This document shows, in pieces, positions 1,663-64,000 of a stretch of DNA of 64,000 nt. Under the pieces are notes generated by a model, which was not told the origin of the DNA, did no database searches, and saw only the letters and a program-made list of their open reading frames with translations. The DNA lies in IMG/VR virus record IMGVR_UViG_3300035670_000008, positions 124,001 through 188,000 of that record; one strand, written 5' to 3'. Both the position numbers and the translations under genes were made by a program. How positions within the stretch are numbered: position 1 is the stretch's first letter; every line of letters begins with the position of its first letter.

Positions 1663-1666
1663 TGGG

Positions 1667-2197: not shown

Positions 2198-2232
2198 ATA
2201 TGTAGCAAAAATAAAACCTCTATATCTATACT

Positions 2233-38551: not shown

Positions 38552-39179
38552 GCCTATGCCCCTCACAGCGTTTACTAAGCCTTTAGAGTCTCACGTCTTA
38601 GCTCCGACTGGTACCATCTTGGAGGTCGTGCAGACCCCAGAGGATTTAGAGTTTTATATTGGTAATTTGCTGACTATCTACGGTGCTAGGCACGCAATGA
38701 AAGTTAGCTATACATTAAGTGAGTTTCATCAAACCTCCAGTCTGTACAGCTTCTTTGACTTAGTTAAGCTGGCTACCAACTTTGGCATGGCTTATACGAT
38801 TACAGCTATTGGTATAGCTCTTGGAAGAGCTTTGGACGATGAGTTAGCTACGTTAGAGTTACTGTACCCAACTCAAACTTACGCGTATCAAGACATCCCG
38901 TCATTATCTGAGGTCAAGTTGGTCAGCTACAACGGTCAAGCCGATGGACTAGGTGAGATTCTAGAGTGGTTCGATTACGATAATATTCATCTGCCGGGGG
39001 CAGTCAACGATTTTAGTTATCTACTCAATTGGGTTGGCAAGCAAGAGCCCCTCTACAGCGCGTTCTTCCCTACGCCTTTTAGCCCCATCACTTTTACAAT
39101 CGAGTTTTTGCACCTCACCTGTAAATTTCCTGTCACTCCTGAACTCACCGCTTACCTTAAGAAACTCTACAATGCCTAA
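38529..39179 (+). CDS. Hypothetical protein (216 aa), baseplate region
   Basis: ORF overlapping both neighbours in the operon. No motif recognised. Confidence 0.6.
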   Translation: MTPATPLKPMPLTAFTKPLESHVLAPTGTILEVVQTPEDLEFYIGNLLTIYGARHAMKVSYTLSEFHQTSSLYSFFDLVKLATNFGMAYTITAIGIALGRALDDELATLELLYPTQTYAYQDIPSLSEVKLVSYNGQADGLGEILEWFDYDNIHLPGAVNDFSYLLNWVGKQEPLYSAFFPTPFSPITFTIEFLHLTCKFPVTPELTAYLKKLYNA

Positions 39180-40284: not shown

Positions 40285-42673
40285 ATTTACCGACTACTCC
40301 GTCCAAAGCCTCACCAAAACAAAGCCAACGATTAGTGGCAGCTCCTACGACACGACGTATGTGCTAGAGACCAGCGCGGCGACAACGCCAGGCAGTCCGG
40401 TAACCGTGACTGTCAGGGCCTACCCGCCGGTCAGCGACCTTAGTCAGCTTAAACTCGAGGCAGCAAACCCAACACTACAAGCAGCCATGGTGGCTACTAA
40501 ATTCGTTCAGACAGAGAAGCCTGGGGTTTATCAGGCATCTGTCACAGTCAGTAAAGCACTGGAGCAAGGGTTAGAGCTATACGTTAGAGACACTAAAGGA
40601 AACCTAAGTAACGGTTCAGTGGTGTCTACGGTAAGCGCGCCAAAAGCAGAGGCCTCAAACTACAACAATCAAGTGGTGAGCACCCTAAACCAAACCTCTG
40701 CGATGTCAGACGCGTCAGAGTCAAACAAGGCAAAAGCGGGCACCTACGATGCGGCTCTGAAAAAGTTAGGGATGAGTGAGCCGACTAGCCGGAGCACCCA
40801 GACGACTAAAGGGAGAACTGGCGGGGCGGTGGAAACCGCGGTAGCTGGATACCGATCGCTAGCAGAGGCCCTCGCAGCCAACCATAAGTATGATGAGTTC
40901 AGCAAGCTCCGGGTGTGGGTAAACCTTTCTAAACCGAAGAACTACCGGATTAAACGGCTTAACGAGTATCGAACCGCTCTAGATAACTGTATGGAGCGAC
41001 TAGCCGTAGTGATGCAGAACTACGACTACGTCGAGGTGGGGAGTAGCGTCAAAGACCATACCAACGCGGAGAACTCCAACGCGCTGTCGTTTCGCTTCAA
41101 TGCTGGTACGTTCTTTGATGTGTATTCACCTGCGTCAGTCTTTAACACGGAGTATCTGATTCAATACTCCACGCGGGGCACCTTTCGCCAAACTGCCATC
41201 GACCAGCTCAGCAGTTTCTATACCTGGCATCGGGCTCAGAACAATATGGTTCACCAGGCTCGAGATTACTTCAACTACTCAACTCAGCACTCCTTTCTGG
41301 GCGGCAATATCAACACGACTATCTACCGAGATAAGAAGGAGCGGTACGAGTATCTAGTGACCCAGATCGGGCAAGTTAAAGGCGGCGAGAAAGTAGAGGG
41401 TAAACTGAGAAGCGCTTCTAAGAAGACGGCTGAATTTAACGGGCAGTCCGCCCAGCTACCTAGTATGGGAGGAAGCGAAAGCGGTGGTATGGGCGGCGGG
41501 GGTTTTACAGTTGAGGGAGCTTCAGACGTAGCTACAGATACGACACTACCCACCAGCTCTGCGACTGAAGCAGCTGAGCCTACTGACGGCGTAAAAGGAA
41601 GTGCTTCCGGTGAAGCCGAGACAGTTGCTCCTGATAAAGTCTCGAACTGGGACATCAGCGTTAAGAACGACTTTAATCTCCAGTCTGTAGTTGGAGGAAT
41701 TATCCAGCAAGCGAAGGATTTATTCTTCCAGCAAGCCAAGGCAATTATTCTCAAAGCCTCCGAGAGCTTATTCTTAAAGTCCTCTAAGCATGTCTGCATA
41801 GAGGCTAAACAAGACCTATACCTGAAAGCCGGCGGCACTCTTTACATCAACGCTGACAACTTAGTTATCCGTACCGTCAGCGGTAACATCCAACGGCTGG
41901 TGGGCTACGCTGGCATCGATGAATACGTAGAGAAGAACGGCATAGACCTGCTCAAGAATGAGGACGGCGACCCTTATAAAGACGAGAACGGGGACTATAT
42001 TACGATGGCTGGAGATGAAGCCGTCTCCGTTAAAATGCCTACTCCACAGAAAGGGACTATCGTTGAGTTTCTGAAGCCAGGCCCTATCTATGTACCGACG
42101 CCCAAATTAGTGGAGGGAGACAATAGCCTCTTTACAGACTTCCTTAAAGACATGAATCTAGACCCCATTACTAACCTCACAGACATCCTAGACGGCAGTG
42201 CGCTAAGCGATGCGTTAGGGGACTCTCTGCTGAGCACTTTTGGGGAAGGAGACCTTGGTAAGTTTATTACTGACGTAGCCACCAGCGGGCTAGAGCAAAT
42301 GCTGGACGCAGGGTTAGACGCACTACCTGGCGCAGGAGAGTTGTTAGATACCGTAGGTGACATTAACGACCAGCTCAATGCCTTCGTCGATGAACTAATC
42401 GAGATTAAGAAGAGTTCGGTGGAGGTCGTAGGGCCTGACCTTAGCTACATCGTCACCTATAAGCTTCCAGAAGCGCCAGCTACTGCTGTAATAACTTACC
42501 CTACGGAGCTACTGGACTACCCGAAAGTTTCAGTACCTAAGCCTGCTTCTACTGGCAGTAACGACCTTAGAAATATGCCCGTGTTACCTAAGGCTCGAAT
42601 CGAACCCCTCTGGCAGAACGGGGTAGATATGAACACACCAACTACCCCAGCAGAGGGAACTCAAGATGCCTAA
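40274..42673 (+). CDS. Spike-like protein with gp5/VgrG-type beta-helix repeats (~799 aa)
   Basis: An 8-residue periodic run, IILKASES-LFLKSSKH-VCIEAKQD-LYLKAGGT-LYINADN-LVIRT. ATG at 40274 is preferred over the TTG at 40271. Confidence 0.55.
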   Translation: MATKFTDYSVQSLTKTKPTISGSSYDTTYVLETSAATTPGSPVTVTVRAYPPVSDLSQLKLEAANPTLQAAMVATKFVQTEKPGVYQASVTVSKALEQGLELYVRDTKGNLSNGSVVSTVSAPKAEASNYNNQVVSTLNQTSAMSDASESNKAKAGTYDAALKKLGMSEPTSRSTQTTKGRTGGAVETAVAGYRSLAEALAANHKYDEFSKLRVWVNLSKPKNYRIKRLNEYRTALDNCMERLAVVMQNYDYVEVGSSVKDHTNAENSNALSFRFNAGTFFDVYSPASVFNTEYLIQYSTRGTFRQTAIDQLSSFYTWHRAQNNMVHQARDYFNYSTQHSFLGGNINTTIYRDKKERYEYLVTQIGQVKGGEKVEGKLRSASKKTAEFNGQSAQLPSMGGSESGGMGGGGFTVEGASDVATDTTLPTSSATEAAEPTDGVKGSASGEAETVAPDKVSNWDISVKNDFNLQSVVGGIIQQAKDLFFQQAKAIILKASESLFLKSSKHVCIEAKQDLYLKAGGTLYINADNLVIRTVSGNIQRLVGYAGIDEYVEKNGIDLLKNEDGDPYKDENGDYITMAGDEAVSVKMPTPQKGTIVEFLKPGPIYVPTPKLVEGDNSLFTDFLKDMNLDPITNLTDILDGSALSDALGDSLLSTFGEGDLGKFITDVATSGLEQMLDAGLDALPGAGELLDTVGDINDQLNAFVDELIEIKKSSVEVVGPDLSYIVTYKLPEAPATAVITYPTELLDYPKVSVPKPASTGSNDLRNMPVLPKARIEPLWQNGVDMNTPTTPAEGTQDA

Positions 42674-51895: not shown

Positions 51896-53677
51896 GTGGC
51901 TTTAGCTGACGGCAATTTAGATTTCGAGGGGTTCTTTACAGGTCTAGCCCAAGACTTGGAGATGCAATTCTCTTCAAGTCTTGCGGCTACGAATATCATC
52001 GACTTCCTAGAGAACGAAGTGGATCAGGTCAGTTGGTTAGGTGAAGGTGGTAGTTTAACCCCGCAACAAATCACACTACTGAAGATATACGACGGGCTGG
52101 AGCTAGATGAAGAGGAGTTAGCTTTAGTTGAGGCTTGGAAAGCGCTAGACCGCACGACCTACGATTTTGAACTAGGCCCTCGCAGACGACAAGCCTTCGT
52201 TATGGAAGCAGGTAGAAATGCGTCTAAGACGTTTATAGGTTCTATCATTTTAGGATACGAGTGGTACAAGCTTTGTATGATGTCAAATCCCCAGGCGTTC
52301 TTCAGGATTGCGGCGTCCACTCTTATCTCCATTTACTGTTTAGCCCCGGCAGCTACCCAAACGAAGAAGACTATCTTTGGTCAATCGAGAGCCTTCCTTA
52401 ATTACATCCCCAAGATTAAACGTTTAATAGACAATAAGAGTATTATCGTCGGGGAAGAAGAAATCAAATATCCAGAGAAGCTACTGTACGTCTATGCCGG
52501 GAACAGTAAAGGTAGCACTCAGGTGGGAAGCCGTGTGATCCTAATGGTAATGGACGAGGTCGCCCGCTTTGAGTCTAAAGACGGAGACTCCAACGCATTA
52601 GAACTGTGGTCTAACGTGGGTGTGTCCGGGATTACCTTTGGTGAGCACGCCCGGCGGGTGGCCATCTCGTCTGCTTGGGAAGAAGGGGATGCTATCCAGA
52701 AGCTATGGAATGCTTCTAAGCTAGAGGATTCTTGGATCGGCTTCCGCTTCCGTACTTGGGATGTTAACCCCAAGATGGACAGGGATAACCCTATTATTGC
52801 AGCGGAGTATAACCTAGACGCTGCCCACGCCAAGCTTGAGTTTGAGGGTGACCGGTCGGCGAACGCCTACTCATTCTTCCACGAAACGGAGGTTCACCGG
52901 GCCTTCAGAGGTAGAGTTGAGTGCGACATCCAAAGGGTTGATTATGGGGATGACCTCATCCGGCTGAAGGTCAACTCGGTGGTACCCGCTACCTATTTAA
53001 CGTATATGCACCTCGACCCTGCTGTGGTGAGAGATGCCTATGCGATGGCGTTTGGCCATGGGACTACAGACTCAGATGGACGTAAGGTCGTTGTGATTGA
53101 CGGACTGGCCGCTTGGGAGCCGAAGCCTGGCCAAGCAGTAAGCTTACTCAACGTCTACGACATCATCTATGGGGTTCACACCCAACGTCCGCTGTATAAG
53201 GTTACTACAGACCATGCACAACAAGCTGAGACGATTCAACGGCTGCGGATGAATGGGTTGAACGCGAGTAGCATTTTCTTCTCCAATCGTATGCAGGTGG
53301 AGATATACGACGCTACTAGGAAGCTACTTCATGAGAACCGATTGATTTTACCTAAAGACTCTCCCTGGACGAACCTCCTTAAGCTAGAGATGATGACGGT
53401 TCAGTATGACCAACAAAAAGGTAAGATTTACCATAATGCGGACAGCTCGAAGGATTTAATTGACTGCGTATGTTCTGTGGTCTGGCATATTGCAGGCAAC
53501 CAAACAGGCACAGGTAACTCCGTTGTGGTCAACCGGAAGTCTAGACTAGGCAACAATCCTATTGACCGGTTTAGCCGTATAGAAGACGAAGACAGCTTCC
53601 AGACGAGCCGCCGAGAGTTGGTGTCTTCACTACGGAGCGGAGCGTCAGCCTCGTTGTTTGAAGAGTACGACTTCTAG
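51896..53677 (+). CDS. terL: Terminase large subunit (593 aa)
   Basis: Walker A-like AGRNASKT, Walker B VILMVMDE, motif III ISSA, and RNase-H-fold nuclease acidic residues (YMHLDP, TTDH, SKDLIDC). Confidence 0.92.
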   Translation: MALADGNLDFEGFFTGLAQDLEMQFSSSLAATNIIDFLENEVDQVSWLGEGGSLTPQQITLLKIYDGLELDEEELALVEAWKALDRTTYDFELGPRRRQAFVMEAGRNASKTFIGSIILGYEWYKLCMMSNPQAFFRIAASTLISIYCLAPAATQTKKTIFGQSRAFLNYIPKIKRLIDNKSIIVGEEEIKYPEKLLYVYAGNSKGSTQVGSRVILMVMDEVARFESKDGDSNALELWSNVGVSGITFGEHARRVAISSAWEEGDAIQKLWNASKLEDSWIGFRFRTWDVNPKMDRDNPIIAAEYNLDAAHAKLEFEGDRSANAYSFFHETEVHRAFRGRVECDIQRVDYGDDLIRLKVNSVVPATYLTYMHLDPAVVRDAYAMAFGHGTTDSDGRKVVVIDGLAAWEPKPGQAVSLLNVYDIIYGVHTQRPLYKVTTDHAQQAETIQRLRMNGLNASSIFFSNRMQVEIYDATRKLLHENRLILPKDSPWTNLLKLEMMTVQYDQQKGKIYHNADSSKDLIDCVCSVVWHIAGNQTGTGNSVVVNRKSRLGNNPIDRFSRIEDEDSFQTSRRELVSSLRSGASASLFEEYDF

Positions 53678-53713: not shown

Positions 53714-54370
53714 ATGCCTAACGAGTCCAACCCTTATAGCCCTATACTACCGCCGCCGCAACCAAGTATTTGGCCTGCTACCTCTGAGGCTGAGATTCTT
53801 CAGACTGTCGAGACTCGATTAACCTATACACCGATTATTGTTCAGTTTGTACCCCCAATTCTTGACGCTGACAGTTCACCTTATACGGACAAACAACGTA
53901 AGCGTCGCTACGCCCTTAGAATTACTACGCCACCTAGCAACCGACCAGGAGAGTGGCAGTATATCCCTGACAGCTACTACTATGAAATCCCAGAGGACGG
54001 GCTGCTTAGATTGCAGCTGGTGCCTTCCGACCGGTATCTACCAATCGGGCGTTACGTTGTAGAATACTTCCGTATAGGTAAGCGGCTGCCCGTGTTGACC
54101 CAGCGGTGGATTGTTCCGAAGCCGCCGCCACTAGGCACCTTTGCATTTAACTACGAACTTCAACCACCGGTGTTACCAATAGATGTCTGGAAAGTCACTA
54201 GCGTCTCCGCAGGTACGGAGTGGGTATCTAACTACAATTCCCTGACTTGGGGTACACCTCCTGCTGTAGGAGAAGTTGTTAATGTCAAATATCAGCGAGC
54301 TCTCACTTTAGATAAACTTATAGACTACGGTATCAATAACTTTAAAGAAACGGATCGGGTGCGCTATTAA
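53714..54370 (+). CDS. Hypothetical protein (218 aa)
   Basis: Pro-rich, beta-rich ORF whose stop is 2 nt before the giant ORF start. Confidence 0.65.
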   Translation: MPNESNPYSPILPPPQPSIWPATSEAEILQTVETRLTYTPIIVQFVPPILDADSSPYTDKQRKRRYALRITTPPSNRPGEWQYIPDSYYYEIPEDGLLRLQLVPSDRYLPIGRYVVEYFRIGKRLPVLTQRWIVPKPPPLGTFAFNYELQPPVLPIDVWKVTSVSAGTEWVSNYNSLTWGTPPAVGEVVNVKYQRALTLDKLIDYGINNFKETDRVRY

Positions 54371-54372
54371 AC

Positions 54373-57300
54373 ATGGCTATCGATTACATCGACGCGGTTG
54401 GCGGTAGACTCTCTGTTAAGCTTGAGAGCTCGCACCTAAACGAGTCTGCCGGTAATATGTCTATCGGCGGTCAAGTCGAGCGCACTAAGGAAGACCCGTA
54501 TGGTGTCGTTTCCTACATGCACGATACGAACAGGCTGGCTCGCTTTGTAGACGGCCTGCGGGATATTGAAGTCATTCAGTTCGCAGCTCCGTTCAACAAC
54601 ATCCAACGTTCCGTTAGCCCCTCCCCAAATCCTTTAAGCAATATGCTGGAGGGGGCATACAACAGCGCGAAATGGATGCAGGCACTGTTCCCTTCAGAAG
54701 TCAGTATGTTAATGAAGACTAAACAACTGAAGTCTTTGGAGACTGACCTCACTAACTTTGACAGTACTGTCCAGAATCCTATTAAACTATACGAAGCGAG
54801 AGAAGCATTACTTAACAACCAGATTCAAGCCAAGTACCATAAGAACAAGGATGGATCTTTCCCGGAAGTTACCGGGGCACAACTAGACCGTCTGCAGCAC
54901 TCGAAGTTGTTAGAAGGTTTATACTCTAAGGAGAAACAAGCCCAACTACAAGCGGAGTTCAAAGAAAAAGGGTTTAACGTACAGGCCCCTACTGGAAAAG
55001 TACAAACAACCACAGCAATGTTTACCGATACCTCCTTTCTAGGGATATCGATTACAGGTTCTGGTGGAGCTTTAGGTAGCTACGAAGACTACACCTTAGG
55101 GTTTGAGAATCCGAATATCATTCGAGACTTAGCCTACTTTAGAGAAAACAAATCGACCATTGATTACTACGAGCGAGAGCCCGTCCCCGGCGTTACGATT
55201 ACAGGTAACCTCTCTATTTATAAGAAGCGGGTTGAAGCTTTAAGAGAAGCTAATGAGATTCAGCGCATCTTGGGGAAAGGTAAAGATGGATTGTTTGTCT
55301 ACGTCGCCTCCCCTTCTATGGACTGGAATGAGCAACCACGGGAGCATAACTACCGGGACACTATCCAGAGGAAGAACGTAGGTGCCTACATTAAGGAGCT
55401 GCAGAAAACTGGAACCCAGGGCATCTTAAGTTTAGGGATTGACAAGAAGCGGATTAACATCCCTGCTGGAGAGAAGACTAAACTTCTACAGAACGCTTAC
55501 ATTGGTGACTCTAGGTCTGGCCGGCGAGACCACGGAAACATGCAGTATATTAACTTGCGAGGTACACCGAAAGACCGGATTAGCAAAGAGGCTCAAGAGG
55601 AGCTAGCCCGTAAAGGTCTACTGGACAAGGCGGTCAAAGGTATCTCTACTTTATCCATCGGACAGTACCGGATTGTTGGGGACGAGTCGATTAACCAAGA
55701 GACGACCATCGATTTAAACAAAGTTAGTCCCGCGTATAGGGAGGCAGCAGAAGGTATTGCTCAAGGCAGCATCGGCGGGAAGAACTTCTACCAACTTAGG
55801 AAGGACGTAGCTAAGGAAGGTATTGCCGGCGCGCTGCTCCAAGAGTTTTACACTCCTACGTTTAGCGACCGGCAGAAGCGGGGCTGGGAGCAAGAAGGGT
55901 TGCTACCTAATATGCCGCTGTCTATGCCCGCCTCGTTCTTTAGATACTTCGAGCCGGGAACCAAAACCCGTATCTACACAGACCGCTTTAAAGCGCTAAC
56001 CGGTTACCGCCCAGAAGGTGCTCAGGGCTACGTTCTTCGTACTTTAGATGAAAAACTTAGCGACCCTGGGTTGGGCAACCAAATCAACTATATGTTCCGC
56101 CAGCGGGACTTGTACGAGGTGGGTAAAGGCGCGGTAGGAACATTAGCCGCGGGTGTAGGCCGGTTTATAGACACAGCCACTGGCTTCTACACTATGCAGA
56201 CTATTAAGGCTCGGGAGTCTGGGCAACTTAGCGGCTCGTTACGCAAGCTGTATGAATCTAGACAGCGAGACCCTTATGAACAGACTGAGAAGAGAGGCTT
56301 TTTCGAGAATCTTACTACTAAAGCTGTGGCTATCACTGGCTCTACTGCTACAGCTATGGCGTCTTACTTTGGGGTGACTCATGCTTATACGATGGCAAAA
56401 GCGGCGGTAGAGCAGGTTGGTGTGGACTATGTGCTTGACTCCATCGCCTCCGGGAAGGTCGGCGGAGCCAGTAAGTTATTTCTAGAACAACTCTTGGATG
56501 AATCTCATAGTAATTTGATTACCGGAGCTAACATCATTTATAACGCGGAGTCCGGTGCCCTCCGCACTATTGAGAACACAGGGAAGGCACTAGACGAGTA
56601 CTTTGACTTGTCGACTCGGTCTAGTCTAAAAGCGCTTCAATTAGACGACGAGCTGGTCGATGAAGTCGTTAAGGAGTCTGATTTCATTGGTGGGATTAGA
56701 GGAAAAGGGATAGCCGCGCCGACGGAGCAGCAAGCTGTGCTTAATCTCATTGGCGAGCTAGACACCTCTGCCGCAGCTAGAGATAACACCGTAGCCGGGT
56801 TGGTTACTAAGAAACTAGAAGCTCGGTTAGCTGAGTTTGCTAAGAGACCTGGCACTGCGACTGGGGCGAAGCCACCAGCAGGTGAAATCAGGGGTTGGGT
56901 AACCGAAATCTATAAAGAGCTAGGAATCCACCGCGATGCTGGAACTATTGACTTAGGGCGTGGGGTAGACCACCCAACCATTGCCGCTAGAGTCCAGCAA
57001 CCAGCGGGCTTCGTCAACATCGCCTCTGTCCGCCGTATGGATACTGGCAACCTCCATAATATGTTTATCCCTCTTCTGGACGAGGTTGTATTTGACAAAA
57101 ATAACCAGCAGTACCGAACAGCAAAAGAGAACTTACTCCGGCTGGCTAAGGCCTCACCGATACTGTCTTATAAACAAACCGCAAATAACTTATCAGCTGC
57201 TTCTGACCTTAAAATCTACAACTACGGCTACGAACGTATCCGACAACTAGCCGAGGTGTTTGACGAACTAGCAGAACAACTCCCGGCTAACCCGTTGATG

Positions 57301-60300
57301 TGGATTAAGCCTATTCGTCAAGTCTTCATGGCTAATCCACTAACTGGAGGTCAAACCCGACACAGCATCGAGGGTGGGGCGGAGACAACCTTAAGGTACA
57401 CCTTTAAAGATTTGATTGGTCCTGGCTTCACTGGGTTAATTAACCTCCAAGGACAGATTACCCGGGAGCTCGTTAATATTAACAAGGTAGGGTTAGGGAA
57501 GCACCTGGAAGGTGGGTTCGACCTTATTAAACAAAGCAAGGAGCTTGTTCAGTCACAGAGTCAGTTAGTCGCTATCATCCAACAGTCCAACTCTGCTCAA
57601 CAAGCAGTAGAGATGCTGGAAGGTTTTAACATAGGCGGCAATCTTACGGAACTTGGCGCCCGCAAAGAGTTTATCAGGAAGCAGAGTCGGTATGATGTCC
57701 TTCTCAGAGACCGCCGCCGGGACTACGAGGAGCTGTTAAAACAAGAGGGCGGCAATCCAGCCTTCAGTGGTTTAAGGAAAGGGTTGTTAGGTATCGGGAC
57801 GGTACTGTTAGTAGACCGGCTGTTTGACACGTTCGTAATGCGTCCACAGGGGGTAGACCTCTTTGACAGTATTCTGTCGGATGTAATTGGCAGCCGCTCA
57901 CCTGCAGTAGAAGGGCGAGAAGGAGACGCGGCCTTCCAATCGCTGTACGACACGGAATATAGTAACGCGTTGCCTAACATCGTTAAGTACCCGTCAGCTG
58001 CCGCAGGGTTCTTCATCGGTGGCCATATGTTCCCTAGCTACGAAGTAGCAGAGAGCAGTATCTACACAGCGATGCGCTCCAAGTATGGTGAGCTAGGTGA
58101 GGCAGCTCTGTCTGGTACTAAGTTCACGCTGCAAGCTGAGGGTGACCGGGCTATAGCACTAGGTATTAATAAGCAGATTATCAAAACTAAGTTCGGTACG
58201 GCTGGGGCACTTCTAGGGGCCAGTGCTGCCTTGATTGGGTCTCAGTTATTAGCTAACTACGTGGCAGATGTAGCTAAGCCCGCAGTCAGAGGGTTTGATA
58301 ATCTAGCCAGTTTAGCTACAGGTGTTTTCACTGGGCAATGGGGACGCTGGAGAGAGCCAGAAAGCGGGTTGGACGTTGACCCAGTGAAGGGCAGCGCCGC
58401 ATCTGTGTTAGCTAAGTTAGTTCACTACAGTGTTCGAGGCCAAGCCAAAGGTTATAGAAAAGGCGGGCTTGTTACTGCGGAGCAGAAGACAGATACCTAC
58501 TTGTTAGGGCTAACTGCTCAAAGCATGATGCAGTCAGACAGTAAGCCTCCTCAACTGTTTTACTCTTTTGCTACCCAGATTGCTTCTCCCTTCTTCCAGT
58601 TCGCTTCGGTAGGTAAAGTAGACCCGGCCAAGAACACTATCAATCTCAACGCGGGGCTTCAGTTATTCCCGTTGTTGGGCGCTGGTTTAATGCTCCCGTC
58701 TCCACTAACACCAAAGGTAACTTATACCTCAGCGTTACCGACGAGGATGGTTGCCAACTACCTCAAGAAGTACCACGAAGGCGTTCGTTATCGATACGAA
58801 CCGAACACCCTTGGGGAGATTCAAGAGCGGGAAGCTTTCCACCGGATGGAGGAGATTAATAAGCTGTCCTCAATGATGCTTGGTGGTGGAGTCAATCTTT
58901 CATTAGATACAAAGCCCTTAGTCTACCTAGCTATGTTAGGTGGGCTGCGAGACTTATCTGAATCCAGTCTCGCCGCGTTTGAGCAAATGCAGGTAAATAA
59001 CCGTGACCTGTCCCCAGATAAAGCGACTAAACTTTATAAAGAGTTGTCGAACTACGAGACATTATTCCATGCCGGCAGAACTGGGTTTAACGTATTAGAC
59101 ACGATGTCTCGGGCGGCTTACTCCCTCCCGATGGTGATGCCGAACTACCTAGTTAAGTCGGCGACTACACTACTTGGTGGCGCAGGACGTACCCAACATA
59201 TCCTCGGCCCTATGGCCCGCCGAGCTAGCCCTTACCTCTTGGCTTTCGGTATCTTGGGGGCTTCGTTCCGCTTCAACGATAAAGCAATGGAATCGGAGCT
59301 GGTAACCTACGCAGACCTCCAGAAGCTCTTCAAGACGGGACAGTACGAAGGGCTCAACCAAAAACTGATTGAGTCTCAAGGCATTAATCTTACCCAGACC
59401 GTAATTGGTTCTGCTTTATTAGGAGCTGCTATTTCCTCCTCTGGAGCCTTTGAGTCTGTCAGGAACTTTGGAGCTGCCTACGACCGGGTTCAGAAAATAA
59501 CTGAGCAAGGAGGCCGGGCAGGATACATTGACCGCCAGAAACATAAGCTGTATAGCATGTGGATGGAACACCTAGCTGAGAAGGGCACCGTTGGGCTACC
59601 CCTCGAGAGCGGGGTGGATTTAGTTATTGAGAGTATCAACACCCCATCGAAAGCTAGTGAGGCCTACGAGCAGATTTCTCGTAGACTGGTCGAGCCTGCC
59701 GAAGCAACCTTACAAACGCGACTCAGAGACCGTCAGTTAATTGAAGCCGCCCGGGAGATTGATATTCCTTTGGTTCGGACGATGCCAACTCGGTTAGGAA
59801 TGTTAGCTCGACGAGTAGCTCCACTTGTGGTGGGCGCGATGGTAGTTAGCCAGATGTTGGCTACGACGGATGGGTTTAAGCAGTCGCCTTGGATGTCTCT
59901 CATAAGAAACTTGACTGATACTGGTGCTGGTGATTTGTCAGCTGAGCAACGAGCGATGCTTACTAAGCTAGGTATTAAGGAGCCGAAGTACCGACCCAAA
60001 GATTTAGGTCAAAGCTTCCGTAACATAGCGGATTATCTGGTCGGTGCTGCGATGACCCCCTTTGGAGGTAACACCTTTGGGCTCTACCAAGACAATCCAA
60101 ACCCATTCAGCCCTATCCTAGGCCCGCTCGGGGTGTCTCTTGGTAGCCAGGATGACGTCCGTCCTTACCTTCAGTCTCAGTCGGTAGCCGCGGATATTAG
60201 TGGTTCGCTTTATCTCTTACCTGCAATGAGCGCTGGCATCTCAGAGGCGATGAACTTAGGGCCTCTGCTTAAGTATGCAGGTCAGCTAGAAACCCATCCA

Positions 60301-63300
60301 AAGGGGTCTCAGATTGCGAGAGCCCTTATTCGTGGTGCTGGATTAAGGACGAGAGCAGCTAAGTTCAAGGGCGGGCCTAGTCAACGGGAGATGCGAGCTG
60401 CGTCTAGTCCTGAGCTGCAAATGGCTTTGGTAAGGCGCTACGACCGACTGCGTCAACTCAGCTGGCAGACGGCTGGAGAACATCAATGGGATGTTCTAGC
60501 TGAGTTCCATCGGGCAGGTCGGATACTAGGCAATAATCAGAGGGGGACGATTCCAGGTGCTGAGATGAATGCGACTCGCCCGGCAACGACTATGATTTAC
60601 GACACGCTGGGTAAACTTCATCTGATACCGGTACTGAATGACGGCACCTTCATTACACCAAGAAAGAACACGGAAACAGAGCTGCTGAAGTTCTTTAGGA
60701 ACCTGATGTCTAGTGGCGCTGGTTATGGCCAAGGAGCAGCTGCGGACTTCTCTGCTGACGTGACAGACACCCTCATCCGCCGCAGTCAAGACCGTGGCGG
60801 CGTGCCTGTACTAAGTTTCTTTAGTGGGCTATTCCAATATGCCTTTAATAGCTTCTATGATAAGAATACTGAAGAGATAGCGGCAGACTCTAATAACGTT
60901 ATCGGGGCGGGCCTCATGGCCGGGGCGGCAATTGCCTTAGGTGCTTCGTTTGTTGGTACGACGTTCGCTACAGGTATACAACTTGTCGGTGCGTTAGCGG
61001 CGTTATCAGACCAAGGAAATATTAGTGACGTTCGCTCCAGCATTCGAGACCTCCGCCAAGGTGTTAAGAAGCGCCTCCGAAGAAGTACATTCTACATTGA
61101 CCAAACAAACGACCGACTGGTTAGACCAGACGGGCATAATCGCATTCGTGCTTTGAAAGACCACAATCTAACCGACGAGGCAGTAGAGCAGATTAACCAA
61201 GCACTGACCGGGCAAGGTCGCTACGGCGGTTACAGCCCGGGTAACGCTTTAGAGACTATTATCGACGCAGACTTACGTACGACGGCTAGCAAACTCGTTA
61301 ACACTTATCATACAGGCGGCGGGCAGACCATCTCTACCACAGTGGTAGAAGAGGTTGACGCTCTAATTAAATCTCTAGATACTCAACTGACAGTGGTTGT
61401 TGGAGGGCAGCAAATTCATGTCGGAGATTTGCTAACCCCGACTGTAGCCGCGGAGGGAGCTACAGAAGCCGTCGTGGCTCACTCGGTTGTTAAAGATAAA
61501 GCTCGGTTGAGCACCGAAATCTATGAGGTACTCACCAGTGGTAAATTCAAGGACACCCAACAACTAGAGATAGAACGTATTCTCCTCGACCATATCGATC
61601 GGGGTCTCGCTGTGACGACCGCAGATGGTCGTTTTGAAGCCGCTCAAGCTACACCCAATGCGTATCAACCGGAGGCTGCAGTTAGAGCTGAACAACAAGC
61701 CGCGGCCAAGAAAGCTGCGGAACAAGGCGTTCAAACTGTAGAAGCTTATGACCCCTCCGTTGGTTATTTACGCTCGAAGATACAAGCCAAGGGTTATAGC
61801 GGATTAATGGCTGAAGGGGCAGCTGGGGCTATGCGGGCAGCTGGGGAACTAATTAACCTTAAAGCTTACTACGAAATATTATCCTACACAGCTGCTATGG
61901 GCTCGTCTGACGTCTTCGACCGCAGACGATCGACTCAGGCAGCAGCCCAGAACACGATTCAAGCTTTTGGGATGATTATCCCAATGCAGTATGCTCTTAA
62001 AGCCGCTCAAGCAAGTCCTGGGGTGGCTATCACAGCTGCGCTAACCGCTGCGGTAATTGGTGGGGCTGCTTTAGGGAATAAGCAGGTAAGAGATACTTTA
62101 GGGAATATATTCAAGCCGGTCTTTAGCTTCGGGGATAAGTATGTTTATAAGCCAGCGGTTCAAGGTTTAGCTGGTATATACGACGCGGTAACCACAGCAG
62201 CGCCTTTCATCCCTCAAGTCTTGAGACCTATCGCGGCGGTCTTCGATCCTATCTTCAGCAATATGCGGTCGGCTGCTGGTAACGACCCAGCCTTAAGTAT
62301 GTTGGCTAACTTCTTTGTGCCTGAGGGTGTCGAGCAGTTCTACCAGCGTAATGCTGAAATAAAAGGTCGAACTACGCCGTGGGGAGAAGCGCAGGAGTTT
62401 TATTCCAATAAAGAGCTCGGTCAATACTACTTGTCTAAAATGGCGTCTAGGCGGCGGAGAGGGCGTTCTATTAATGCAGGTATAGACAGCGACCTACTCC
62501 ACCCCTTCATGCAAGGTAAGCAGGTAGATATTCAGTATATGAATATCTTTGCTGACCGGTATCTCGGCGGTGATGGCCGAATTATGGAGCAGTTCCAAAC
62601 CGACCGCCAGATGAGCAACCTACTGTTAATGGCGATCCAACGGCGTCAAGGAATGATCGACCAGTATGCTGAAGGCTCTTATATGCGGAAGCCTTACACC
62701 AAAGAGAATGTTCATCATTACTTCTCTACTGCTTTAGCTTTGTCCAAGTTTAGCTACGCTCAGACGGGAAGCTTTATTGAAGCTCCAATTAACCAAGCGG
62801 CACGAGGTATAGGTACAACTCTCGGAGCACTCCAGTATGTTAGCGAGTTAATCCCATCAGAGGTTGGCACAAAGATTAAGCAGGGTACTGTTGGGGCAGG
62901 TATCGGCTTTATGGTAGGTGCGCAGTTGAGCCATCTTGGTAAGGACGAGGGTGAGCGCCGTCAGTACGCAGCAATTGGAGGTTCTGTTGGCGCCACAGTC
63001 GGAGGAGCCGGTTCTGTTATCTTGGCACCATCTGCCCAACATCTTGCTCGTCGGGCTTTCGTCGCGCTTAAGAAAGACAAGACTGTTAGAGCGATCGCTG
63101 GTGGTGTAGCGACAGGCGCTAAGTATCTAACTAAGCAAGCTGGTAACGCATTAGGTATGGCAGGGAGATGGTTAAATAAAGCTGCTCCTTACCTTACGTT
63201 TGGTGCGTTGACAACAGCGGCTGTGTACACCAACTATGACTTCCTAGCCAATCTGGTGGATGGGGATGACCGACATAAAAAAGGTCCACTTTATAATCCT

Positions 63301-64000
63301 CTACTGAAGATGGGTGTATCTGCCGGCGTAGGCGCTACAACTACCTTACTCGGATTTACCGCAGTACTTGGTAAGAACAGTAATATCTTAGCTAGCCGGT
63401 TAGGTAAAGCTACCGGTGGGGTCTTCCGAGCCGGCGGCAAAGGCGCTAACGTTTTGCTTCTAACGGGTCTAACTAACTTCTTACTGACAAATAACGTTAC
63501 TGGCGCGTTACCTAAAACGGCTCTCCGGTCAGCTTACACCGCTTTGAACATTGGAAGAGAAGAAGACTTTGAGAACTACTACTCTAGCGGGGCTGCTGCC
63601 GCTTCTTTGGTTACTGGTGTAGTTACGCCCCCGGTCACTAATTGGATACATGGAAATTATAAGAGACAACTAACCGGTCTTTTAACGCCGGAGCTCAACA
63701 CGATAGGCCCAGCTTCAGCTATACCAGTAGATGAGTCTCAACGAGCTATGGCATTGGTAACTAAACTTCAAGGAGACTTAGACTTCGTTGAAGGGCGAAC
63801 CTCCATGAAACCGGTGAACACCACGGCTAAGATGGCGCGGTTGTTGGGCATTGCGGAAGACGCAGTTGTACAGACTAATTTAGAGGAAGAGTATCTTAAC
63901 GTTTTAAGTAATAAACAGTTAGCACTACGCCATGCTAGAAGTTTAGTAGACGCCAATCTCCAACATGGTTTTATCCACGAGGGACTGCGCTCTATTCGCG
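54373..64000 (+). CDS. Giant protein, partial (>3209 aa), with many Gly/Ala-rich hydrophobic segments; candidate ejection/channel or tape-measure protein
   Basis: Absent from the ORF track because no stop falls in the window. I read frame +1 from ATG 54373 (MAIDYIDAVGGRLSVK...) to base 64000 and found no stop. Hydrophobic segments include AGALLGASAALIGSQLLA (~58201), IGAGLMAGAAIALGASFVG (~60901), VAITAALTAAVIGGAALG (~62025) and TVGAGIGFMVGA (~62887). Confidence 0.85.
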   Translation, partial: MAIDYIDAVGGRLSVKLESSHLNESAGNMSIGGQVERTKEDPYGVVSYMHDTNRLARFVDGLRDIEVIQFAAPFNNIQRSVSPSPNPLSNMLEGAYNSAKWMQALFPSEVSMLMKTKQLKSLETDLTNFDSTVQNPIKLYEAREALLNNQIQAKYHKNKDGSFPEVTGAQLDRLQHSKLLEGLYSKEKQAQLQAEFKEKGFNVQAPTGKVQTTTAMFTDTSFLGISITGSGGALGSYEDYTLGFENPNIIRDLAYFRENKSTIDYYEREPVPGVTITGNLSIYKKRVEALREANEIQRILGKGKDGLFVYVASPSMDWNEQPREHNYRDTIQRKNVGAYIKELQKTGTQGILSLGIDKKRINIPAGEKTKLLQNAYIGDSRSGRRDHGNMQYINLRGTPKDRISKEAQEELARKGLLDKAVKGISTLSIGQYRIVGDESINQETTIDLNKVSPAYREAAEGIAQGSIGGKNFYQLRKDVAKEGIAGALLQEFYTPTFSDRQKRGWEQEGLLPNMPLSMPASFFRYFEPGTKTRIYTDRFKALTGYRPEGAQGYVLRTLDEKLSDPGLGNQINYMFRQRDLYEVGKGAVGTLAAGVGRFIDTATGFYTMQTIKARESGQLSGSLRKLYESRQRDPYEQTEKRGFFENLTTKAVAITGSTATAMASYFGVTHAYTMAKAAVEQVGVDYVLDSIASGKVGGASKLFLEQLLDESHSNLITGANIIYNAESGALRTIENTGKALDEYFDLSTRSSLKALQLDDELVDEVVKESDFIGGIRGKGIAAPTEQQAVLNLIGELDTSAAARDNTVAGLVTKKLEARLAEFAKRPGTATGAKPPAGEIRGWVTEIYKELGIHRDAGTIDLGRGVDHPTIAARVQQPAGFVNIASVRRMDTGNLHNMFIPLLDEVVFDKNNQQYRTAKENLLRLAKASPILSYKQTANNLSAASDLKIYNYGYERIRQLAEVFDELAEQLPANPLMWIKPIRQVFMANPLTGGQTRHSIEGGAETTLRYTFKDLIGPGFTGLINLQGQITRELVNINKVGLGKHLEGGFDLIKQSKELVQSQSQLVAIIQQSNSAQQAVEMLEGFNIGGNLTELGARKEFIRKQSRYDVLLRDRRRDYEELLKQEGGNPAFSGLRKGLLGIGTVLLVDRLFDTFVMRPQGVDLFDSILSDVIGSRSPAVEGREGDAAFQSLYDTEYSNALPNIVKYPSAAAGFFIGGHMFPSYEVAESSIYTAMRSKYGELGEAALSGTKFTLQAEGDRAIALGINKQIIKTKFGTAGALLGASAALIGSQLLANYVADVAKPAVRGFDNLASLATGVFTGQWGRWREPESGLDVDPVKGSAASVLAKLVHYSVRGQAKGYRKGGLVTAEQKTDTYLLGLTAQSMMQSDSKPPQLFYSFATQIASPFFQFASVGKVDPAKNTINLNAGLQLFPLLGAGLMLPSPLTPKVTYTSALPTRMVANYLKKYHEGVRYRYEPNTLGEIQEREAFHRMEEINKLSSMMLGGGVNLSLDTKPLVYLAMLGGLRDLSESSLAAFEQMQVNNRDLSPDKATKLYKELSNYETLFHAGRTGFNVLDTMSRAAYSLPMVMPNYLVKSATTLLGGAGRTQHILGPMARRASPYLLAFGILGASFRFNDKAMESELVTYADLQKLFKTGQYEGLNQKLIESQGINLTQTVIGSALLGAAISSSGAFESVRNFGAAYDRVQKITEQGGRAGYIDRQKHKLYSMWMEHLAEKGTVGLPLESGVDLVIESINTPSKASEAYEQISRRLVEPAEATLQTRLRDRQLIEAAREIDIPLVRTMPTRLGMLARRVAPLVVGAMVVSQMLATTDGFKQSPWMSLIRNLTDTGAGDLSAEQRAMLTKLGIKEPKYRPKDLGQSFRNIADYLVGAAMTPFGGNTFGLYQDNPNPFSPILGPLGVSLGSQDDVRPYLQSQSVAADISGSLYLLPAMSAGISEAMNLGPLLKYAGQLETHPKGSQIARALIRGAGLRTRAAKFKGGPSQREMRAASSPELQMALVRRYDRLRQLSWQTAGEHQWDVLAEFHRAGRILGNNQRGTIPGAEMNATRPATTMIYDTLGKLHLIPVLNDGTFITPRKNTETELLKFFRNLMSSGAGYGQGAAADFSADVTDTLIRRSQDRGGVPVLSFFSGLFQYAFNSFYDKNTEEIAADSNNVIGAGLMAGAAIALGASFVGTTFATGIQLVGALAALSDQGNISDVRSSIRDLRQGVKKRLRRSTFYIDQTNDRLVRPDGHNRIRALKDHNLTDEAVEQINQALTGQGRYGGYSPGNALETIIDADLRTTASKLVNTYHTGGGQTISTTVVEEVDALIKSLDTQLTVVVGGQQIHVGDLLTPTVAAEGATEAVVAHSVVKDKARLSTEIYEVLTSGKFKDTQQLEIERILLDHIDRGLAVTTADGRFEAAQATPNAYQPEAAVRAEQQAAAKKAAEQGVQTVEAYDPSVGYLRSKIQAKGYSGLMAEGAAGAMRAAGELINLKAYYEILSYTAAMGSSDVFDRRRSTQAAAQNTIQAFGMIIPMQYALKAAQASPGVAITAALTAAVIGGAALGNKQVRDTLGNIFKPVFSFGDKYVYKPAVQGLAGIYDAVTTAAPFIPQVLRPIAAVFDPIFSNMRSAAGNDPALSMLANFFVPEGVEQFYQRNAEIKGRTTPWGEAQEFYSNKELGQYYLSKMASRRRRGRSINAGIDSDLLHPFMQGKQVDIQYMNIFADRYLGGDGRIMEQFQTDRQMSNLLLMAIQRRQGMIDQYAEGSYMRKPYTKENVHHYFSTALALSKFSYAQTGSFIEAPINQAARGIGTTLGALQYVSELIPSEVGTKIKQGTVGAGIGFMVGAQLSHLGKDEGERRQYAAIGGSVGATVGGAGSVILAPSAQHLARRAFVALKKDKTVRAIAGGVATGAKYLTKQAGNALGMAGRWLNKAAPYLTFGALTTAAVYTNYDFLANLVDGDDRHKKGPLYNPLLKMGVSAGVGATTTLLGFTAVLGKNSNILASRLGKATGGVFRAGGKGANVLLLTGLTNFLLTNNVTGALPKTALRSAYTALNIGREEDFENYYSSGAAAASLVTGVVTPPVTNWIHGNYKRQLTGLLTPELNTIGPASAIPVDESQRAMALVTKLQGDLDFVEGRTSMKPVNTTAKMARLLGIAEDAVVQTNLEEEYLNVLSNKQLALRHARSLVDANLQHGFIHEGLRSIR

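What the first reader, a model, noticed from the sequence alone, without database searches (positions are those of the whole stretch)
54373..64000. Second giant (>3209 aa) membrane-active-looking protein absent from the ORF track
Seen: 9.6 kb of uninterrupted frame +1 runs to the window end. A soluble N-terminal ~580 aa is followed by helical stretches punctuated by more than ten Gly/Ala-rich hydrophobic segments, densest at 62880-63630 (e.g. AAIGGSVGATVGGAGSVIL, GVSAGVGATTTLLGFTAVLG). I recognised no catalytic motif. Known: tape measures and internal ejection proteins (T7 core proteins, crAss cargo proteins) form DNA-conducting channels and show this pattern. Inference: this protein builds the trans-envelope conduit through which the PLD-RNAP giant and the DNA enter, so the two giants together (about 25 of 64 kb) form one ejection-and-transcription apparatus.
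Basis: partly seen in the sequence, partly recalled or inferred. Interest (0 to 1): 0.7.

Follow-up and report, generated by a model that had tools for sequence, protein, structure and literature searches.

The report
Giant phage envelope-breaching tape-measure-like protein
The open frame is the first 46% of a real 6,943-residue late protein of a jumbo contractile-tailed phage, built from a PLD-fold head domain, a long helical stretch with glycine-rich hydrophobic segments and a tail-end cassette of five or six cell-wall-cutting enzymes. It founds an unannotated family of 3,000-7,900-residue proteins that includes gp120 of the cultured Microcystis phage Ma-LMM01, and it most likely opens the host envelope for DNA entry.

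Summary
Frame +1 is open from window 54373 to the window end. In the 216,563-bp phage genome the gene runs on to 6,943 aa.

- Residues 1-480 form a divergent phospholipase-D-superfamily fold.
- The last ~1,550 aa, outside the window, carry SLT, M23, VanY, a class-A beta-lactamase-like domain, a degenerate M23-like region and an RlpA-type DPBB domain.
- The protein belongs to a family of about 30 giant proteins (2,882-7,866 aa).

The family shares a helical core (aa 507-690), scattered uncharged Gly/Ala-rich hydrophobic segments and variable C-terminal cell-wall hydrolases. Its gene always closes the late operon after TerL and a conserved ~200-aa protein. Members include Ma-LMM01 gp120 and a 4,151-aa protein of Microcoleus phage My-WqHQDG, both annotated "hypothetical".

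My best reading is a virion-delivered envelope-breaching protein of the tape-measure type, ejected C-terminus first. A capsid-internal ejection protein is the main rival.

Its coupling to the RNAP giant remains inference. This is a new variant of a known kind, of moderately high interest.

The parts
54373..64000 (+). First 3,209 codons of a 6,943-aa gene. It continues 11,204 nt past the window, to genome G000:C1:199204 (the gene spans G000:C1:178373-199204). The part outside the window carries further hydrophobic segments, the last near aa 5033-5078, and Pro-rich linkers at about aa 4250-4700. It then carries SLT at aa 5410-5476, M23 at 5601-5685, VanY at 5786-5918, Beta-lactamase2 at 5986-6136, an M23-like region at about 6268-6390, DPBB/RlpA at 6468-6564, and a Pro-rich C-terminal tail conserved in the two closest relatives.
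54382..55812 (+). N-terminal alpha/beta domain (aa ~4-480) with a two-lobed phospholipase-D-superfamily fold. Motif 1 keeps H175-x-K177 (window 54895-54903). Motif 2 reads H386-x-N388 (window 55528-55536), and this Lys-to-Asn change is conserved in the six closest members.
   Evidence: AF2 model with pLDDT mostly 80-97 over this domain. Foldseek against PDB: PPK1 E 1e-6, PLD, PLD3/4 and Tdp1, all at probability 1.00. BFVD: viral PLD proteins. Distant family members match Pfam PLDc_2 at E 2e-17 in the aligned region.
55891..56442 (+). Family-defining helical core (aa 507-690). It is the only stretch found in all 29 representatives, with invariant D559, G586, D600, G642 and Y665.
56470..60372 (+). 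Helical region (aa ~700-2000) conserved in 19-26 of the 29 representatives.
58198..63372 (+). Span holding the six strict uncharged Gly/Ala/Ser/Thr-rich hydrophobic segments of the window part. They start at aa 1276, 1423, 2176 (a 36-aa double segment), 2544, 2866 and 2982. A weak Pfam Gly-zipper_YMGG match lies at about aa 2835-2880.
53714..54370 (+). Conserved beta-rich 218-aa protein that sits immediately upstream of the giant in every context examined. It is a likely partner or assembly factor of unknown fold.
   Evidence: phmmer E 1e-38 to 1e-133 against the upstream neighbours in L003, L004, L005, L006 and L007. Weak hhalign match to Ma-LMM01 gp119: E 1.5e-4, probability 52%. AF2 pLDDT only 55.
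51896..53677 (+). Large terminase subunit, the first gene of the conserved trio TerL, ~200-aa protein, giant.
   Evidence: PHROG terminase match. Homologs sit upstream of family members in L003, L004, L005 and My-WqHQDG. Ma-LMM01 gp118 is annotated terminase.

Best explanation
The gene encodes a virion-delivered envelope-breaching protein of the tape-measure type. It belongs to a jumbo contractile-tailed phage distantly related to the Ma-LMM01 and Microcoleus cyanophages.

**Shown.**
- It is a real, conserved late-operon gene.
- Its architecture runs: PLD-fold domain, family core, about 4,500 aa of mostly helical sequence with 12 or more uncharged Gly/Ala-rich hydrophobic segments, Pro-rich linkers, then a cassette of peptidoglycan enzymes.
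- The cassette holds lytic transglycosylases (SLT and RlpA-type DPBB), an M23 endopeptidase, a VanY-type carboxypeptidase and a serine beta-lactamase/PBP-like domain.
- The sequence motifs I checked by eye are in place: HxxxD and HxH in M23, SxHxxGxAxD and ExxH in VanY, E-S and GLxQ in SLT, and SxxK in the beta-lactamase-like domain.

**Inferred mechanism.**
1. The protein is stored extended, either in the tail-tube lumen attached to the baseplate hub or partly in the capsid.
2. On sheath contraction it leaves C-terminus first.
3. The enzyme cassette cuts both the glycan strands and the peptide cross-links of a thick wall.
4. The glycine-zipper-like hydrophobic helices then insert into the cytoplasmic membrane and form or line the passage for DNA.
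5. The N-terminal PLD-fold domain arrives last, at the membrane or in the cytoplasm. There it acts on a phosphodiester substrate (phospholipid, nucleic acid or polyphosphate), or only binds one.
For: **Real gene.**

**Phage context.** Portal, protease, MCP, a 1,195-aa sheath, tube, a gp6-like wedge protein, collagen-like fibres and TerL all lie on the same strand, with the giant as the last gene before convergent genes.

**Hydrolase cassette.**. C-terminal cell-wall hydrolases recur in the family: M23 in 14/27, VanY in 6, DPBB in 3, and single cases of Phage_lysozyme2, SLT, S11 and Hydrolase_2.

**Hydrophobic segments.** They are enriched over shuffles and over the genome's other giants and eight other large window proteins. 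In most members they lie between the core and the enzyme cassette.

**Leaning towards the tail tip and a tape-measure role.**
- No other tape-measure candidate turned up by Pfam or PHROG in the tail module or among the genome's other large ORFs that I scanned.
- The genome's only M23 and only SLT are inside the giant. In Ma-LMM01 the homologous M23 (45% identity) is a separate gene, gp095, inside the baseplate module, and gp120 has no Pfam hydrolase match. This looks like a fusion/fission link between the giant's C-terminus and the baseplate.
- The DPBB domain matches the one in the baseplate hub chain of Anabaena myophage A-1(L), PDB 8KEA.
- There is a precedent. P23-45 gp96 is a 5,002-aa tape measure with an N-terminal enzyme, membrane segments and a metallopeptidase.
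- Ma-LMM01 gp120 is transcribed in the same temporal cluster as the baseplate and terminase genes.
Against: - There is no virion proteomics or imaging for any family member.
- No TMP model matches the protein outside its M23 region, in Pfam, NCBIfam or PHROG.
- The gene does not lie between tube and hub. It lies after TerL, a position more typical of head-associated proteins.
- Length does not fit a simple ruler. A-1(L) uses about 689 aa for 1,045 A, or 1.5 A/aa. MaMV-DH01 has a 260-nm tail, yet its gp120 homolog of about 2,898 aa (98.7% identical over the 2,000 aa compared) would predict about 435 nm. The window protein would predict about 1,040 nm.
- Close relatives differ by about 1,000 aa.
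- The N-terminal PLD has lost one catalytic Lys, so it may be inactive.
- No separate endolysin was found with four common families. A role in lysis is therefore not excluded.
Confidence: 0.6

Rival explanations
1. Capsid-internal ejection ('pilot' or polyvalent) protein. It would be packed in the head near the portal, threaded through the tail after contraction, and reassembled in the envelope like T7 gp14/15/16 or P22 ejection proteins. A separate, unrecognised protein would then be the true tape measure.
For: - The gene sits next to TerL rather than in the tail module.
- Length does not scale with the 260-nm tail of the Ma-LMM01 group.
- Close relatives differ by about 1,000 aa.
- The M23 region also matches a PHROG named 'minor head protein'.
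- One copy takes roughly 900 nm3, a small fraction of a 216-kb capsid. This is my own arithmetic, not a tool result.
- The unassigned 800-aa protein (window 40271-42673) could be a conventional tape measure. That is an inference from its size only.
Against: - No similarity to MuF, T7 core or crAss cargo families. The Atlas gave only a 0.68 lead to crAss_CARGO2.
- The M23 fusion/fission link to the Ma-LMM01 baseplate gene, and the DPBB link to the A-1(L) hub, both point to the tail tip.
- No other tape-measure candidate was detected.
Confidence: 0.25
2. A non-virion late protein used for lysis or wall remodelling from within. It would be a giant membrane-anchored endolysin/holin-like protein that the phage uses to get out, not in.
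For: - No Phage_lysozyme, Amidase_2 or GH19 domain exists anywhere in the genome, and the only SLT and M23 are in this protein.
- It has hydrophobic segments plus hydrolases.
- There are weak holin-family matches: at E 0.1, and in 2 members at E 1.7e-4.
Against: - Some 5,400 aa of conserved non-enzymatic sequence and a PLD domain are hard to explain for a lysin.
- Ma-LMM01 gp120 keeps the family core but has no Pfam hydrolase match, so the enzymes are accessory to the family's core function.
- The hydrolases matched are those typical of virion-associated lysins.
- Only four endolysin families were tested.
Confidence: 0.07
3. Not a single gene. The frame would be an assembly chimera or a fusion of several genes by sequencing error.
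For: Only its extreme size.
Against: - Independent Logan assemblies of four runs are identical over 6 kb.
- The same 6,943-aa protein occurs on 3 contigs.
- Collinear full-length homologs of 6,860 and 7,866 aa exist, and about 30 giants carry the same core.
- Family members occur in cultured phages.
Confidence: 0.01

Closest known systems
Thermus phage P23-45 gp96 (5,002-aa tape measure fused to a virion RNA polymerase; bioRxiv 10.1101/2022.12.01.518664)
   Same: Both are giant proteins with an enzyme domain at the N-terminus, then membrane segments, then a metallopeptidase. gp96 is thought to be ejected into the envelope to form the DNA channel.
   Different: P23-45 is a siphovirus with a known 800-nm tail that matches the protein's length. 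Its N-terminal enzyme is an RNAP, not a PLD fold. There is no sequence similarity. The window protein carries five or six wall enzymes rather than one, belongs to a contractile-tailed phage, and is encoded after TerL.
Tape measure proteins with lysin domains (T5 Pb2, mycobacteriophage TM4 TMP, staphylococcal phage TMPs; PHROG 10030)
   Same: All are helical, carry hydrophobic segments and have a C-terminal M23 or transglycosylase domain. The M23 region matches PHROG 10030, 'tail length tape measure protein'. The T5, TM4 and staphylococcal examples are from my own knowledge.
   Different: No TMP family model matches outside the M23 domain. The window protein is 5-10 times longer. Its gene is not in the tube-to-hub position. 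Its length does not fit the tail length known in the Ma-LMM01 group.
phiKZ gp181 (2,237-aa virion-associated lytic transglycosylase of a jumbo myovirus; from my own knowledge)
   Same: Both are very large tail-associated proteins of jumbo contractile phages with a wall hydrolase near the C-terminus. Both are longer than the tail would require.
   Different: I made no homology test, because the sequence was not fetched. gp181 has one hydrolase domain and no PLD domain.
T7 gp14/gp15/gp16 and other internal ejection proteins
   Same: Both combine a lytic transglycosylase with membrane-inserting helical segments, and both are proposed to make a trans-envelope conduit.
   Different: No sequence or profile similarity. 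The T7 proteins are three separate proteins stored in a podovirus capsid, and the SLT of gp16 is N-terminal.
Ma-LMM01 gp120 / MaMV-DC, -DH01, -DL and -CH homologs, and Microcoleus phage My-WqHQDG WOL31340.1
   Same: These are true family members. The A1 profile gives E 1.7e-19 for gp120 and 5.4e-50 for My-WqHQDG; hhalign gives 99.8% for My-WqHQDG. The Microcystis phages keep the TerL, small protein, giant trio, and My-WqHQDG has TerL, two small ORFs, then the giant.
   Different: They are shorter (2,898 and 4,151 aa). gp120 has no Pfam-detectable hydrolase, and its M23 is a separate baseplate-module gene. All are annotated 'hypothetical protein'.

Membership tests
Tail tape measure protein | Gene lies in the tail module between the tube (or chaperone) and the baseplate hub | tested here: not met
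   After the tube-like gene (window 32482) come a 1,111-aa and a 630-aa protein. I read these by eye as hub-like and spike-like. The giant lies 21 kb further on, after TerL.
Tail tape measure protein | Match to a curated TMP model (Pfam, NCBIfam or PHROG) | tested here: not met
   Nothing in aa 1-5400. Only the M23 domain touches PHROG 10030.
Tail tape measure protein | Long, mainly helical protein with hydrophobic segments and often a C-terminal wall hydrolase | tested here: met
   The AF2 model is helical from aa 520 to 1200. There are 12 strict hydrophobic segments.
Tail tape measure protein | Length proportional to tail length (about 1.5 A per residue) | tested here: inconclusive
   The only morphology available is for MaMV-DH01: a 260-nm tail against a homolog of about 2,898 aa, which predicts 435 nm. 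Part of the protein could still act as the ruler. The tail length of the window phage is unknown.
Tail tape measure protein | Located in the tail-tube lumen of the virion | not testable with these tools
   Needs proteomics or cryo-EM.
Internal ejection / cargo proteins (T7 core, crAss cargo, MuF-linked polyvalent proteins) | Sequence or profile similarity to a known family (MuF, T7 gp14-16, crAss_CARGO) | tested here: not met
   No Pfam or PHROG match. The Atlas score of 0.68 to crAss_CARGO2 is below any useful level.
Internal ejection / cargo proteins (T7 core, crAss cargo, MuF-linked polyvalent proteins) | Packaged in the capsid | not testable with these tools
   Needs virion fractionation and proteomics.
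Phospholipase D superfamily (N-terminal domain) | Two-lobed PLD fold | tested here: met
   Foldseek against PDB: PPK1 E 1e-6, and PLD, PLD3/4 and Tdp1, all at probability 1.00. BFVD returns viral PLD proteins.
Phospholipase D superfamily (N-terminal domain) | Two complete HxK...GSxN (HKD) motifs | tested here: not met
   Motif 1 keeps H175-x-K177 but not GSxN. Motif 2 is H386-x-N388. Distant family members keep both canonical motifs. The window domain has the fold but may not be an active enzyme.
Peptidase M23 | Pfam score above the gathering threshold, plus HxxxD and HxH zinc ligands | tested here: met
   72-80 bits against a cut-off of 28.7. The H-A-G-E-D and H-L-H motifs are read from the translation.
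VanY / LAS D-Ala-D-Ala carboxypeptidase | Pfam score above the gathering threshold, plus SxHxxGxAxD and ExxH | tested here: met
   106 bits against a cut-off of 25. Motifs are read from the translation. PDB relatives include LdcB and VanXY.
RlpA-type DPBB lytic transglycosylase | Match above the curated cut-off | tested here: met
   Pfam DPBB_1 gives 49-52 bits against a cut-off of 28.8. NCBIfam rlpA gives 77.8 bits, just under its cut-off of 82.15. I did not check the catalytic residue.
SLT lytic transglycosylase | Match above the cut-off, plus the catalytic E-S motif | tested here: inconclusive
   17.2-19.5 bits, below the 21.3 cut-off, when scanned as protein. 22.6 bits, above the cut-off, in the genome search. 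The E-S and G-L-x-Q motifs are present.
Class A beta-lactamase / PBP-like serine hydrolase | SxxK, SxN and KTG motifs | tested here: inconclusive
   Pfam Beta-lactamase2 gives 32-37 bits against a cut-off of 22. SxxK and S-S-N are present. The third motif reads K-I-G rather than KTG. The NCBIfam class A model scores far below its cut-off. The substrate is unknown.

The most novel reading that the evidence does not exclude
The family is a new class of tape-measure/ejection hybrid. A single polypeptide of up to 7,866 aa would fill the tail lumen and continue into the capsid, or would specify contractile tails of 0.5-1 micrometre. On ejection it would deliver, in order, a multi-enzyme wall-drilling head, a self-inserting membrane channel, and a PLD-type enzyme that remodels membrane phospholipid or attacks host nucleic acid at the entry site. 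If so, these would be among the largest known phage proteins, and the PLD-fold domains at the start of two different giants would mark a shared delivery or anchoring module.
Probability: 0.2. Interest if true: 0.8.

Novelty: new variant of a known kind. Interest (0 to 1): 0.62.

Why it matters
- **A function for an unannotated family.** The work gives a testable function to about 30 giant proteins, all unnamed or generically named in the sources searched. The family includes gp120 of Ma-LMM01, the reference phage of bloom-forming Microcystis, where experiments are possible.
- **A tape-measure candidate.** The protein is a candidate for the tape measure that Pfam and PHROG scans did not find in this phage.
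- **How a thick wall might be crossed.** A contractile-tailed phage may cross a thick, highly cross-linked wall by carrying glycan-cutting and peptide-cutting enzymes on one ejected polypeptide.
- **A new enzyme-tape-measure pairing.** After the P23-45 RNAP-tape-measure fusion, this would add a PLD-fold domain to a tape-measure-like protein.
- **Scale of investment.** This gene takes 9.6% of the genome, and the three giants together take 22.6% (my arithmetic). That points to heavy investment in the entry step.

Tried and rejected
- **Phage collection searches.** Megablast and tblastn of the window part against 50,697 phage records found no match at E <= 1e-5. Relatives in cultured phages appeared only with the family profile.
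- **Viral contigs.** A search with the N-terminal 600 aa found nothing.
- **Family libraries.** Pfam, PHROG and NCBIfam found nothing in aa 1-5400 apart from weak glycine-zipper matches.
- **PDB sequence search.** Nothing for the window part, aa 4300-5400 or aa 6137-6467.
- **ESM Atlas.** No usable lead.
- **Internal repeats and the other giants.** No internal repeats, and no similarity to the other two giants.
- **Ma-LMM01 gp108.** I first considered it (1,359 aa) as the syntenic counterpart or tape measure. I rejected it because hhalign probability was 0.1% and it carries DUF4815.
- **The ~200-aa partner.** Its AF2 model was too poor (pLDDT 55) to search. The complex prediction of the partner with the core gave 'no answer' and is not evidence either way.
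- **Size limit.** The look-up of encoding contigs refuses proteins over 5,000 aa, so P0002 has no context.
- **Other contigs.** L004 and L006 are not held, so I could not search them for the RNAP giant.
- **Papers.** The original Ma-LMM01 papers were not held. The 209-nm tail length I recall for Ma-LMM01 is therefore unverified and I did not use it.
Full report
**1. The observation**

Window 54373-64000, frame +1, is open for 3,209 codons. The ORF lister leaves out frames that run off the window, which is why the gene was 'absent from the ORF track'.

The window is G000:C1:124001-188000 of a single 216,563-bp viral contig. CheckV puts its completeness at 96%. Read in that contig, the frame starts at the ATG at window 54373, which is 2 nt after the stop of the preceding gene. 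It ends at genome 199204, giving 6,943 aa.

Three lines of evidence show it is a real gene:
- The same protein is on record from three contigs.
- Logan contigs of four runs, 'subsurface' and 'soil' metagenomes of one study, match window 58001-64000 without a single difference. These may be the source samples.
- Relatives of 6,860 and 7,866 aa align collinearly, at 47% identity over about 85% of the first 5,000 aa and 54-55% over the first 1,200 aa.

**2. Anatomy**

*N-terminal domain, aa 1-480.* An AF2 model built on a 27-sequence family alignment (A1) is confident here, with pLDDT mostly 80-97. Foldseek places it in the phospholipase-D superfamily. The matches are the PPK1 C-terminal domains at E 1e-6, bacterial PLD, PLD3/4 and Tdp1, all at probability 1.00. 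Viral PLD proteins match in BFVD.

Distant family members carry a canonical Pfam PLDc_2 domain (E 2e-17) at the aligned position. In the window protein and its five closest relatives:
- motif 1 keeps H175-x-K177;
- motif 2 reads H386-x-N388;
- the GSxN elements are replaced.

So the fold is retained, but activity is uncertain.

*Family core, aa 507-690.* This helical stretch is the only part found in all 29 representatives. A further conserved helical region reaches about aa 2000.

*Middle, aa ~1270-5080.* This part has no detectable internal repeat and no match in Pfam, PHROG, NCBIfam or PDB. It holds most of the hydrophobic segments:

| Sequence | Strict uncharged hydrophobic 19-mers |
|---|---|
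| Whole giant (6,943 aa) | 12 |
| Shuffles of the giant | 2.5 +/- 1.5 (maximum 7 in 200) |
| Window part of the giant | 6 (12 under a relaxed rule) |
| Shuffles of the window part | 1.4 +/- 1.2 |
| The genome's other two giants | 0 and 2 |
| Eight other window proteins of 500 aa or more | 0 |

About 55% of the residues in these segments are Gly, Ala, Ser or Thr. The trait is family-wide, mostly at 1-3.4 segments per 1,000 aa. One segment gives a weak Gly-zipper_YMGG match.

*Linkers, aa ~4250-4700.* These are Pro-rich.

*C-terminal cassette, aa 5410-6564.* All of it lies outside the window.

| Domain | Residues | Score |
|---|---|---|
| SLT | 5410-5476 | 22.6 bits in the genome search; below cut-off when scanned as protein |
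| Peptidase_M23 | 5601-5685 | E 4e-20 |
| VanY | 5786-5918 | E 1e-30 |
| Beta-lactamase2 | 5986-6136 | E 7e-8 |
| Degenerate M23-like stretch | about 6268-6390 | only a weak match to Ma-LMM01 gp095, iE 0.02 |
| DPBB_1 / RlpA | 6468-6564 | E 6e-13 |

The metal-binding and catalytic motifs of M23, VanY and SLT, and the SxxK of the serine-hydrolase domain, can be read in the translation.

*C-terminal tail.* A Pro-rich tail follows, and its last ~275 aa are conserved in the two closest relatives.

**3. Genomic setting**

The window holds the late module of a contractile-tailed phage:

| Window start | Product |
|---|---|
| 18981 | portal |
| 21903 | protease |
| 22999 | MCP |
| 28822 | 1,195-aa sheath |
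| 32482 | tube-like protein |
| 43478 | gp6-like wedge protein |
| 47136 | collagen-like fibre |
| 51896 | TerL |
| 53714 | 218-aa protein |
| 54373 | the giant |

Convergent genes follow the giant.

The two proteins after the tube (1,111 and 630 aa) look like hub and spike by eye. This is inference. No tape measure was recognised in the module or among the genome's other large ORFs that I scanned.

The genome has three giants of 4,239, 5,112 and 6,943 aa. Together they take 22.6% of its length, and they share no similarity with one another.

**4. Relatives**

An exhaustive phmmer search of 1.84 billion representatives with aa 1-1200 returned 29 proteins. Twenty-seven of them are 2,882-7,866 aa long. 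The other two, of 485 and 1,863 aa, look like fragments.

In every context I could fetch, the gene follows TerL, which carries an intein in some. In all but My-WqHQDG it also follows a strongly conserved ~200-aa beta-rich protein, and it precedes convergent replication genes. The contexts were L003, L004, L005, L006 and L007.

The MCP is nearest to Microcoleus phage My-WqHQDG (30% identity) and to Microcystis phages of the Ma-LMM01 group (27% identity). The family profile finds these members:
- a 4,151-aa 'hypothetical protein' in My-WqHQDG, with hhalign at 99.8% and E 5.5e-29;
- gp120 of Ma-LMM01 (2,898 aa), at E 1.7e-19 and 6.8e-11.

In Ma-LMM01, gp120 lies after gp118 (terminase) and gp119 (211 aa). 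gp119 is weakly similar to the 218-aa protein. All nine Microcystis-phage records call gp120 hypothetical.

gp120 is transcribed in the same temporal cluster as the baseplate and terminase genes (supplement of PMC5780444).

Across 27 members, the C-terminal 1,600 aa carry a changing set of wall hydrolases:

| Pfam family | Members of 27 |
|---|---|
| Peptidase_M23 | 14 |
| VanY | 6 |
| DPBB_1 | 3 |
| Beta-lactamase2 | 2 |
| Phage_lysozyme2, SLT, Peptidase_S11, Hydrolase_2 | 1 each |

**5. What it most likely does**

The protein combines both classes of peptidoglycan cutters, glycan and peptide, with many membrane-type helices and a late-operon position. That argues for a protein carried by the virion and used to breach the envelope.

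Several points lean towards a tape-measure-type, tail-tip-anchored protein that leaves C-terminus first:
- No other tape-measure candidate was found.
- The genome's only M23 and only SLT lie in the giant. In Ma-LMM01 the homologous M23 is a separate gene (gp095) inside the baseplate module, and gp120 has no Pfam hydrolase match.
- The DPBB domain matches the one in the baseplate hub chain of Anabaena myophage A-1(L), PDB 8KEA.
- The order of domains suits C-terminus-first exit.
- P23-45 gp96 is a precedent: a 5,002-aa tape measure with an N-terminal enzyme, membrane segments and a metallopeptidase.

Several points count against a simple ruler:
- The gene is not between tube and hub.
- No TMP model matches it.
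- Lengths do not fit. A-1(L) uses about 689 aa for 1,045 A. MaMV-DH01 has a 260-nm tail, while its gp120 homolog would span about 435 nm if fully extended. The window protein would span about 1,040 nm.

The main rival is therefore a capsid-internal ejection protein. A role in lysis is a minor rival, because four common endolysin families are absent from the genome.

**6.

The 'conduit' remains an inference. The link to the 5,112-aa giant rests only on co-occurrence within one lineage:
- G001 holds a 50%-identical homolog of that giant at the syntenic position.
- Ma-LMM01 has gp080 (3,562 aa) as well as gp120.

The profile of the giant's PLD region touches the HKD motif of the 5,112-aa protein only at motif level, with probability 8%.

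**7. Novelty**

The kind of protein is known: tape measures and ejection proteins with lysin domains. What is new:
- the family itself, which is unannotated even in cultured phages;
- its size, up to 7,866 aa;
- the N-terminal PLD-fold domain;
- the five-to-six-enzyme cassette.

I rate it a new variant of a known kind. The host is unknown. The nearest relatives are cyanophages, but the DNA comes from subsurface and soil metagenomes.

Noticed in passing
window 2233-17571 (-): The other giant (5,112 aa) has a weak PLDc_2 match at aa 524-591 (E 1e-4, below the cut-off) and a D-Y-D-G-D motif at aa 3816. A 50%-identical homolog sits at the syntenic place in G001. It also matches Ma-LMM01 gp080 (3,562 aa) weakly (E 7e-4). 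I did not test it for an RNA polymerase fold.
   Followed up: partly
outside the window: G000:C1:103066-115785 (-), locus L013: A third giant ORF (4,239 aa) carries a D-N-D-G-D motif at aa 2668. The genome may therefore encode two giant DxDGD proteins, which recalls the virion and non-virion RNAP pair of P23-45. The three giants take 22.6% of the genome and show no similarity to each other.
   Followed up: partly
window 38529-39179 and 39034-40284 (+): Two ORFs of the baseplate region overlap by 146 nt. The second starts at a TTG, and an internal Met about 46 codons downstream would remove the overlap. This is either a mis-called start or a frameshift site.
   Followed up: no
L004 5666-9382 and L006 5678-9388; compare window 51896-53677: In distant relatives the TerL gene upstream of the giant is about 1,240 aa long and carries intein/LAGLIDADG/Hint matches. 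The window's TerL (593 aa) is intein-free.
   Followed up: no
outside the window: G000:C1:19582-22425 (-), locus L011: The ribonucleotide reductase large subunit (947 aa) matches RNR models in two blocks. An insert at about aa 380-560 separates them and hits endonuclease and helicase PHROGs. It is possibly an intein.
   Followed up: no
whole genome G000: No Phage_lysozyme, Amidase_2 or GH19 domain is present. The only M23 and SLT domains are inside the giant, so the phage's endolysin is unidentified.
   Followed up: partly
window 36659-38551 (+) and 33320-36655 (+): The 630-aa protein has an OB-fold-like spike N-terminus followed by a long Gly-rich region. The 1,111-aa protein before it ends in a hub-like segment. 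Both have no Pfam or PHROG assignment; I named them by eye only.
   Followed up: no
window 54373-64000 (sequencing runs X1-X4): The DNA comes from 'subsurface' and 'soil' metagenomes of one study, yet the nearest cultured relatives are cyanophages of Microcystis and Microcoleus. L004 has a weak CP12 match next to its giant. The host of the window phage is therefore open.
   Followed up: no
outside the window: G000:C1:80233-84483 (+), locus L010: A 1,416-aa protein consists of repeated Ig-like (Hoc-like / tail-protein) modules. It is probably a decoration or fibre protein encoded far from the structural module.
   Followed up: no
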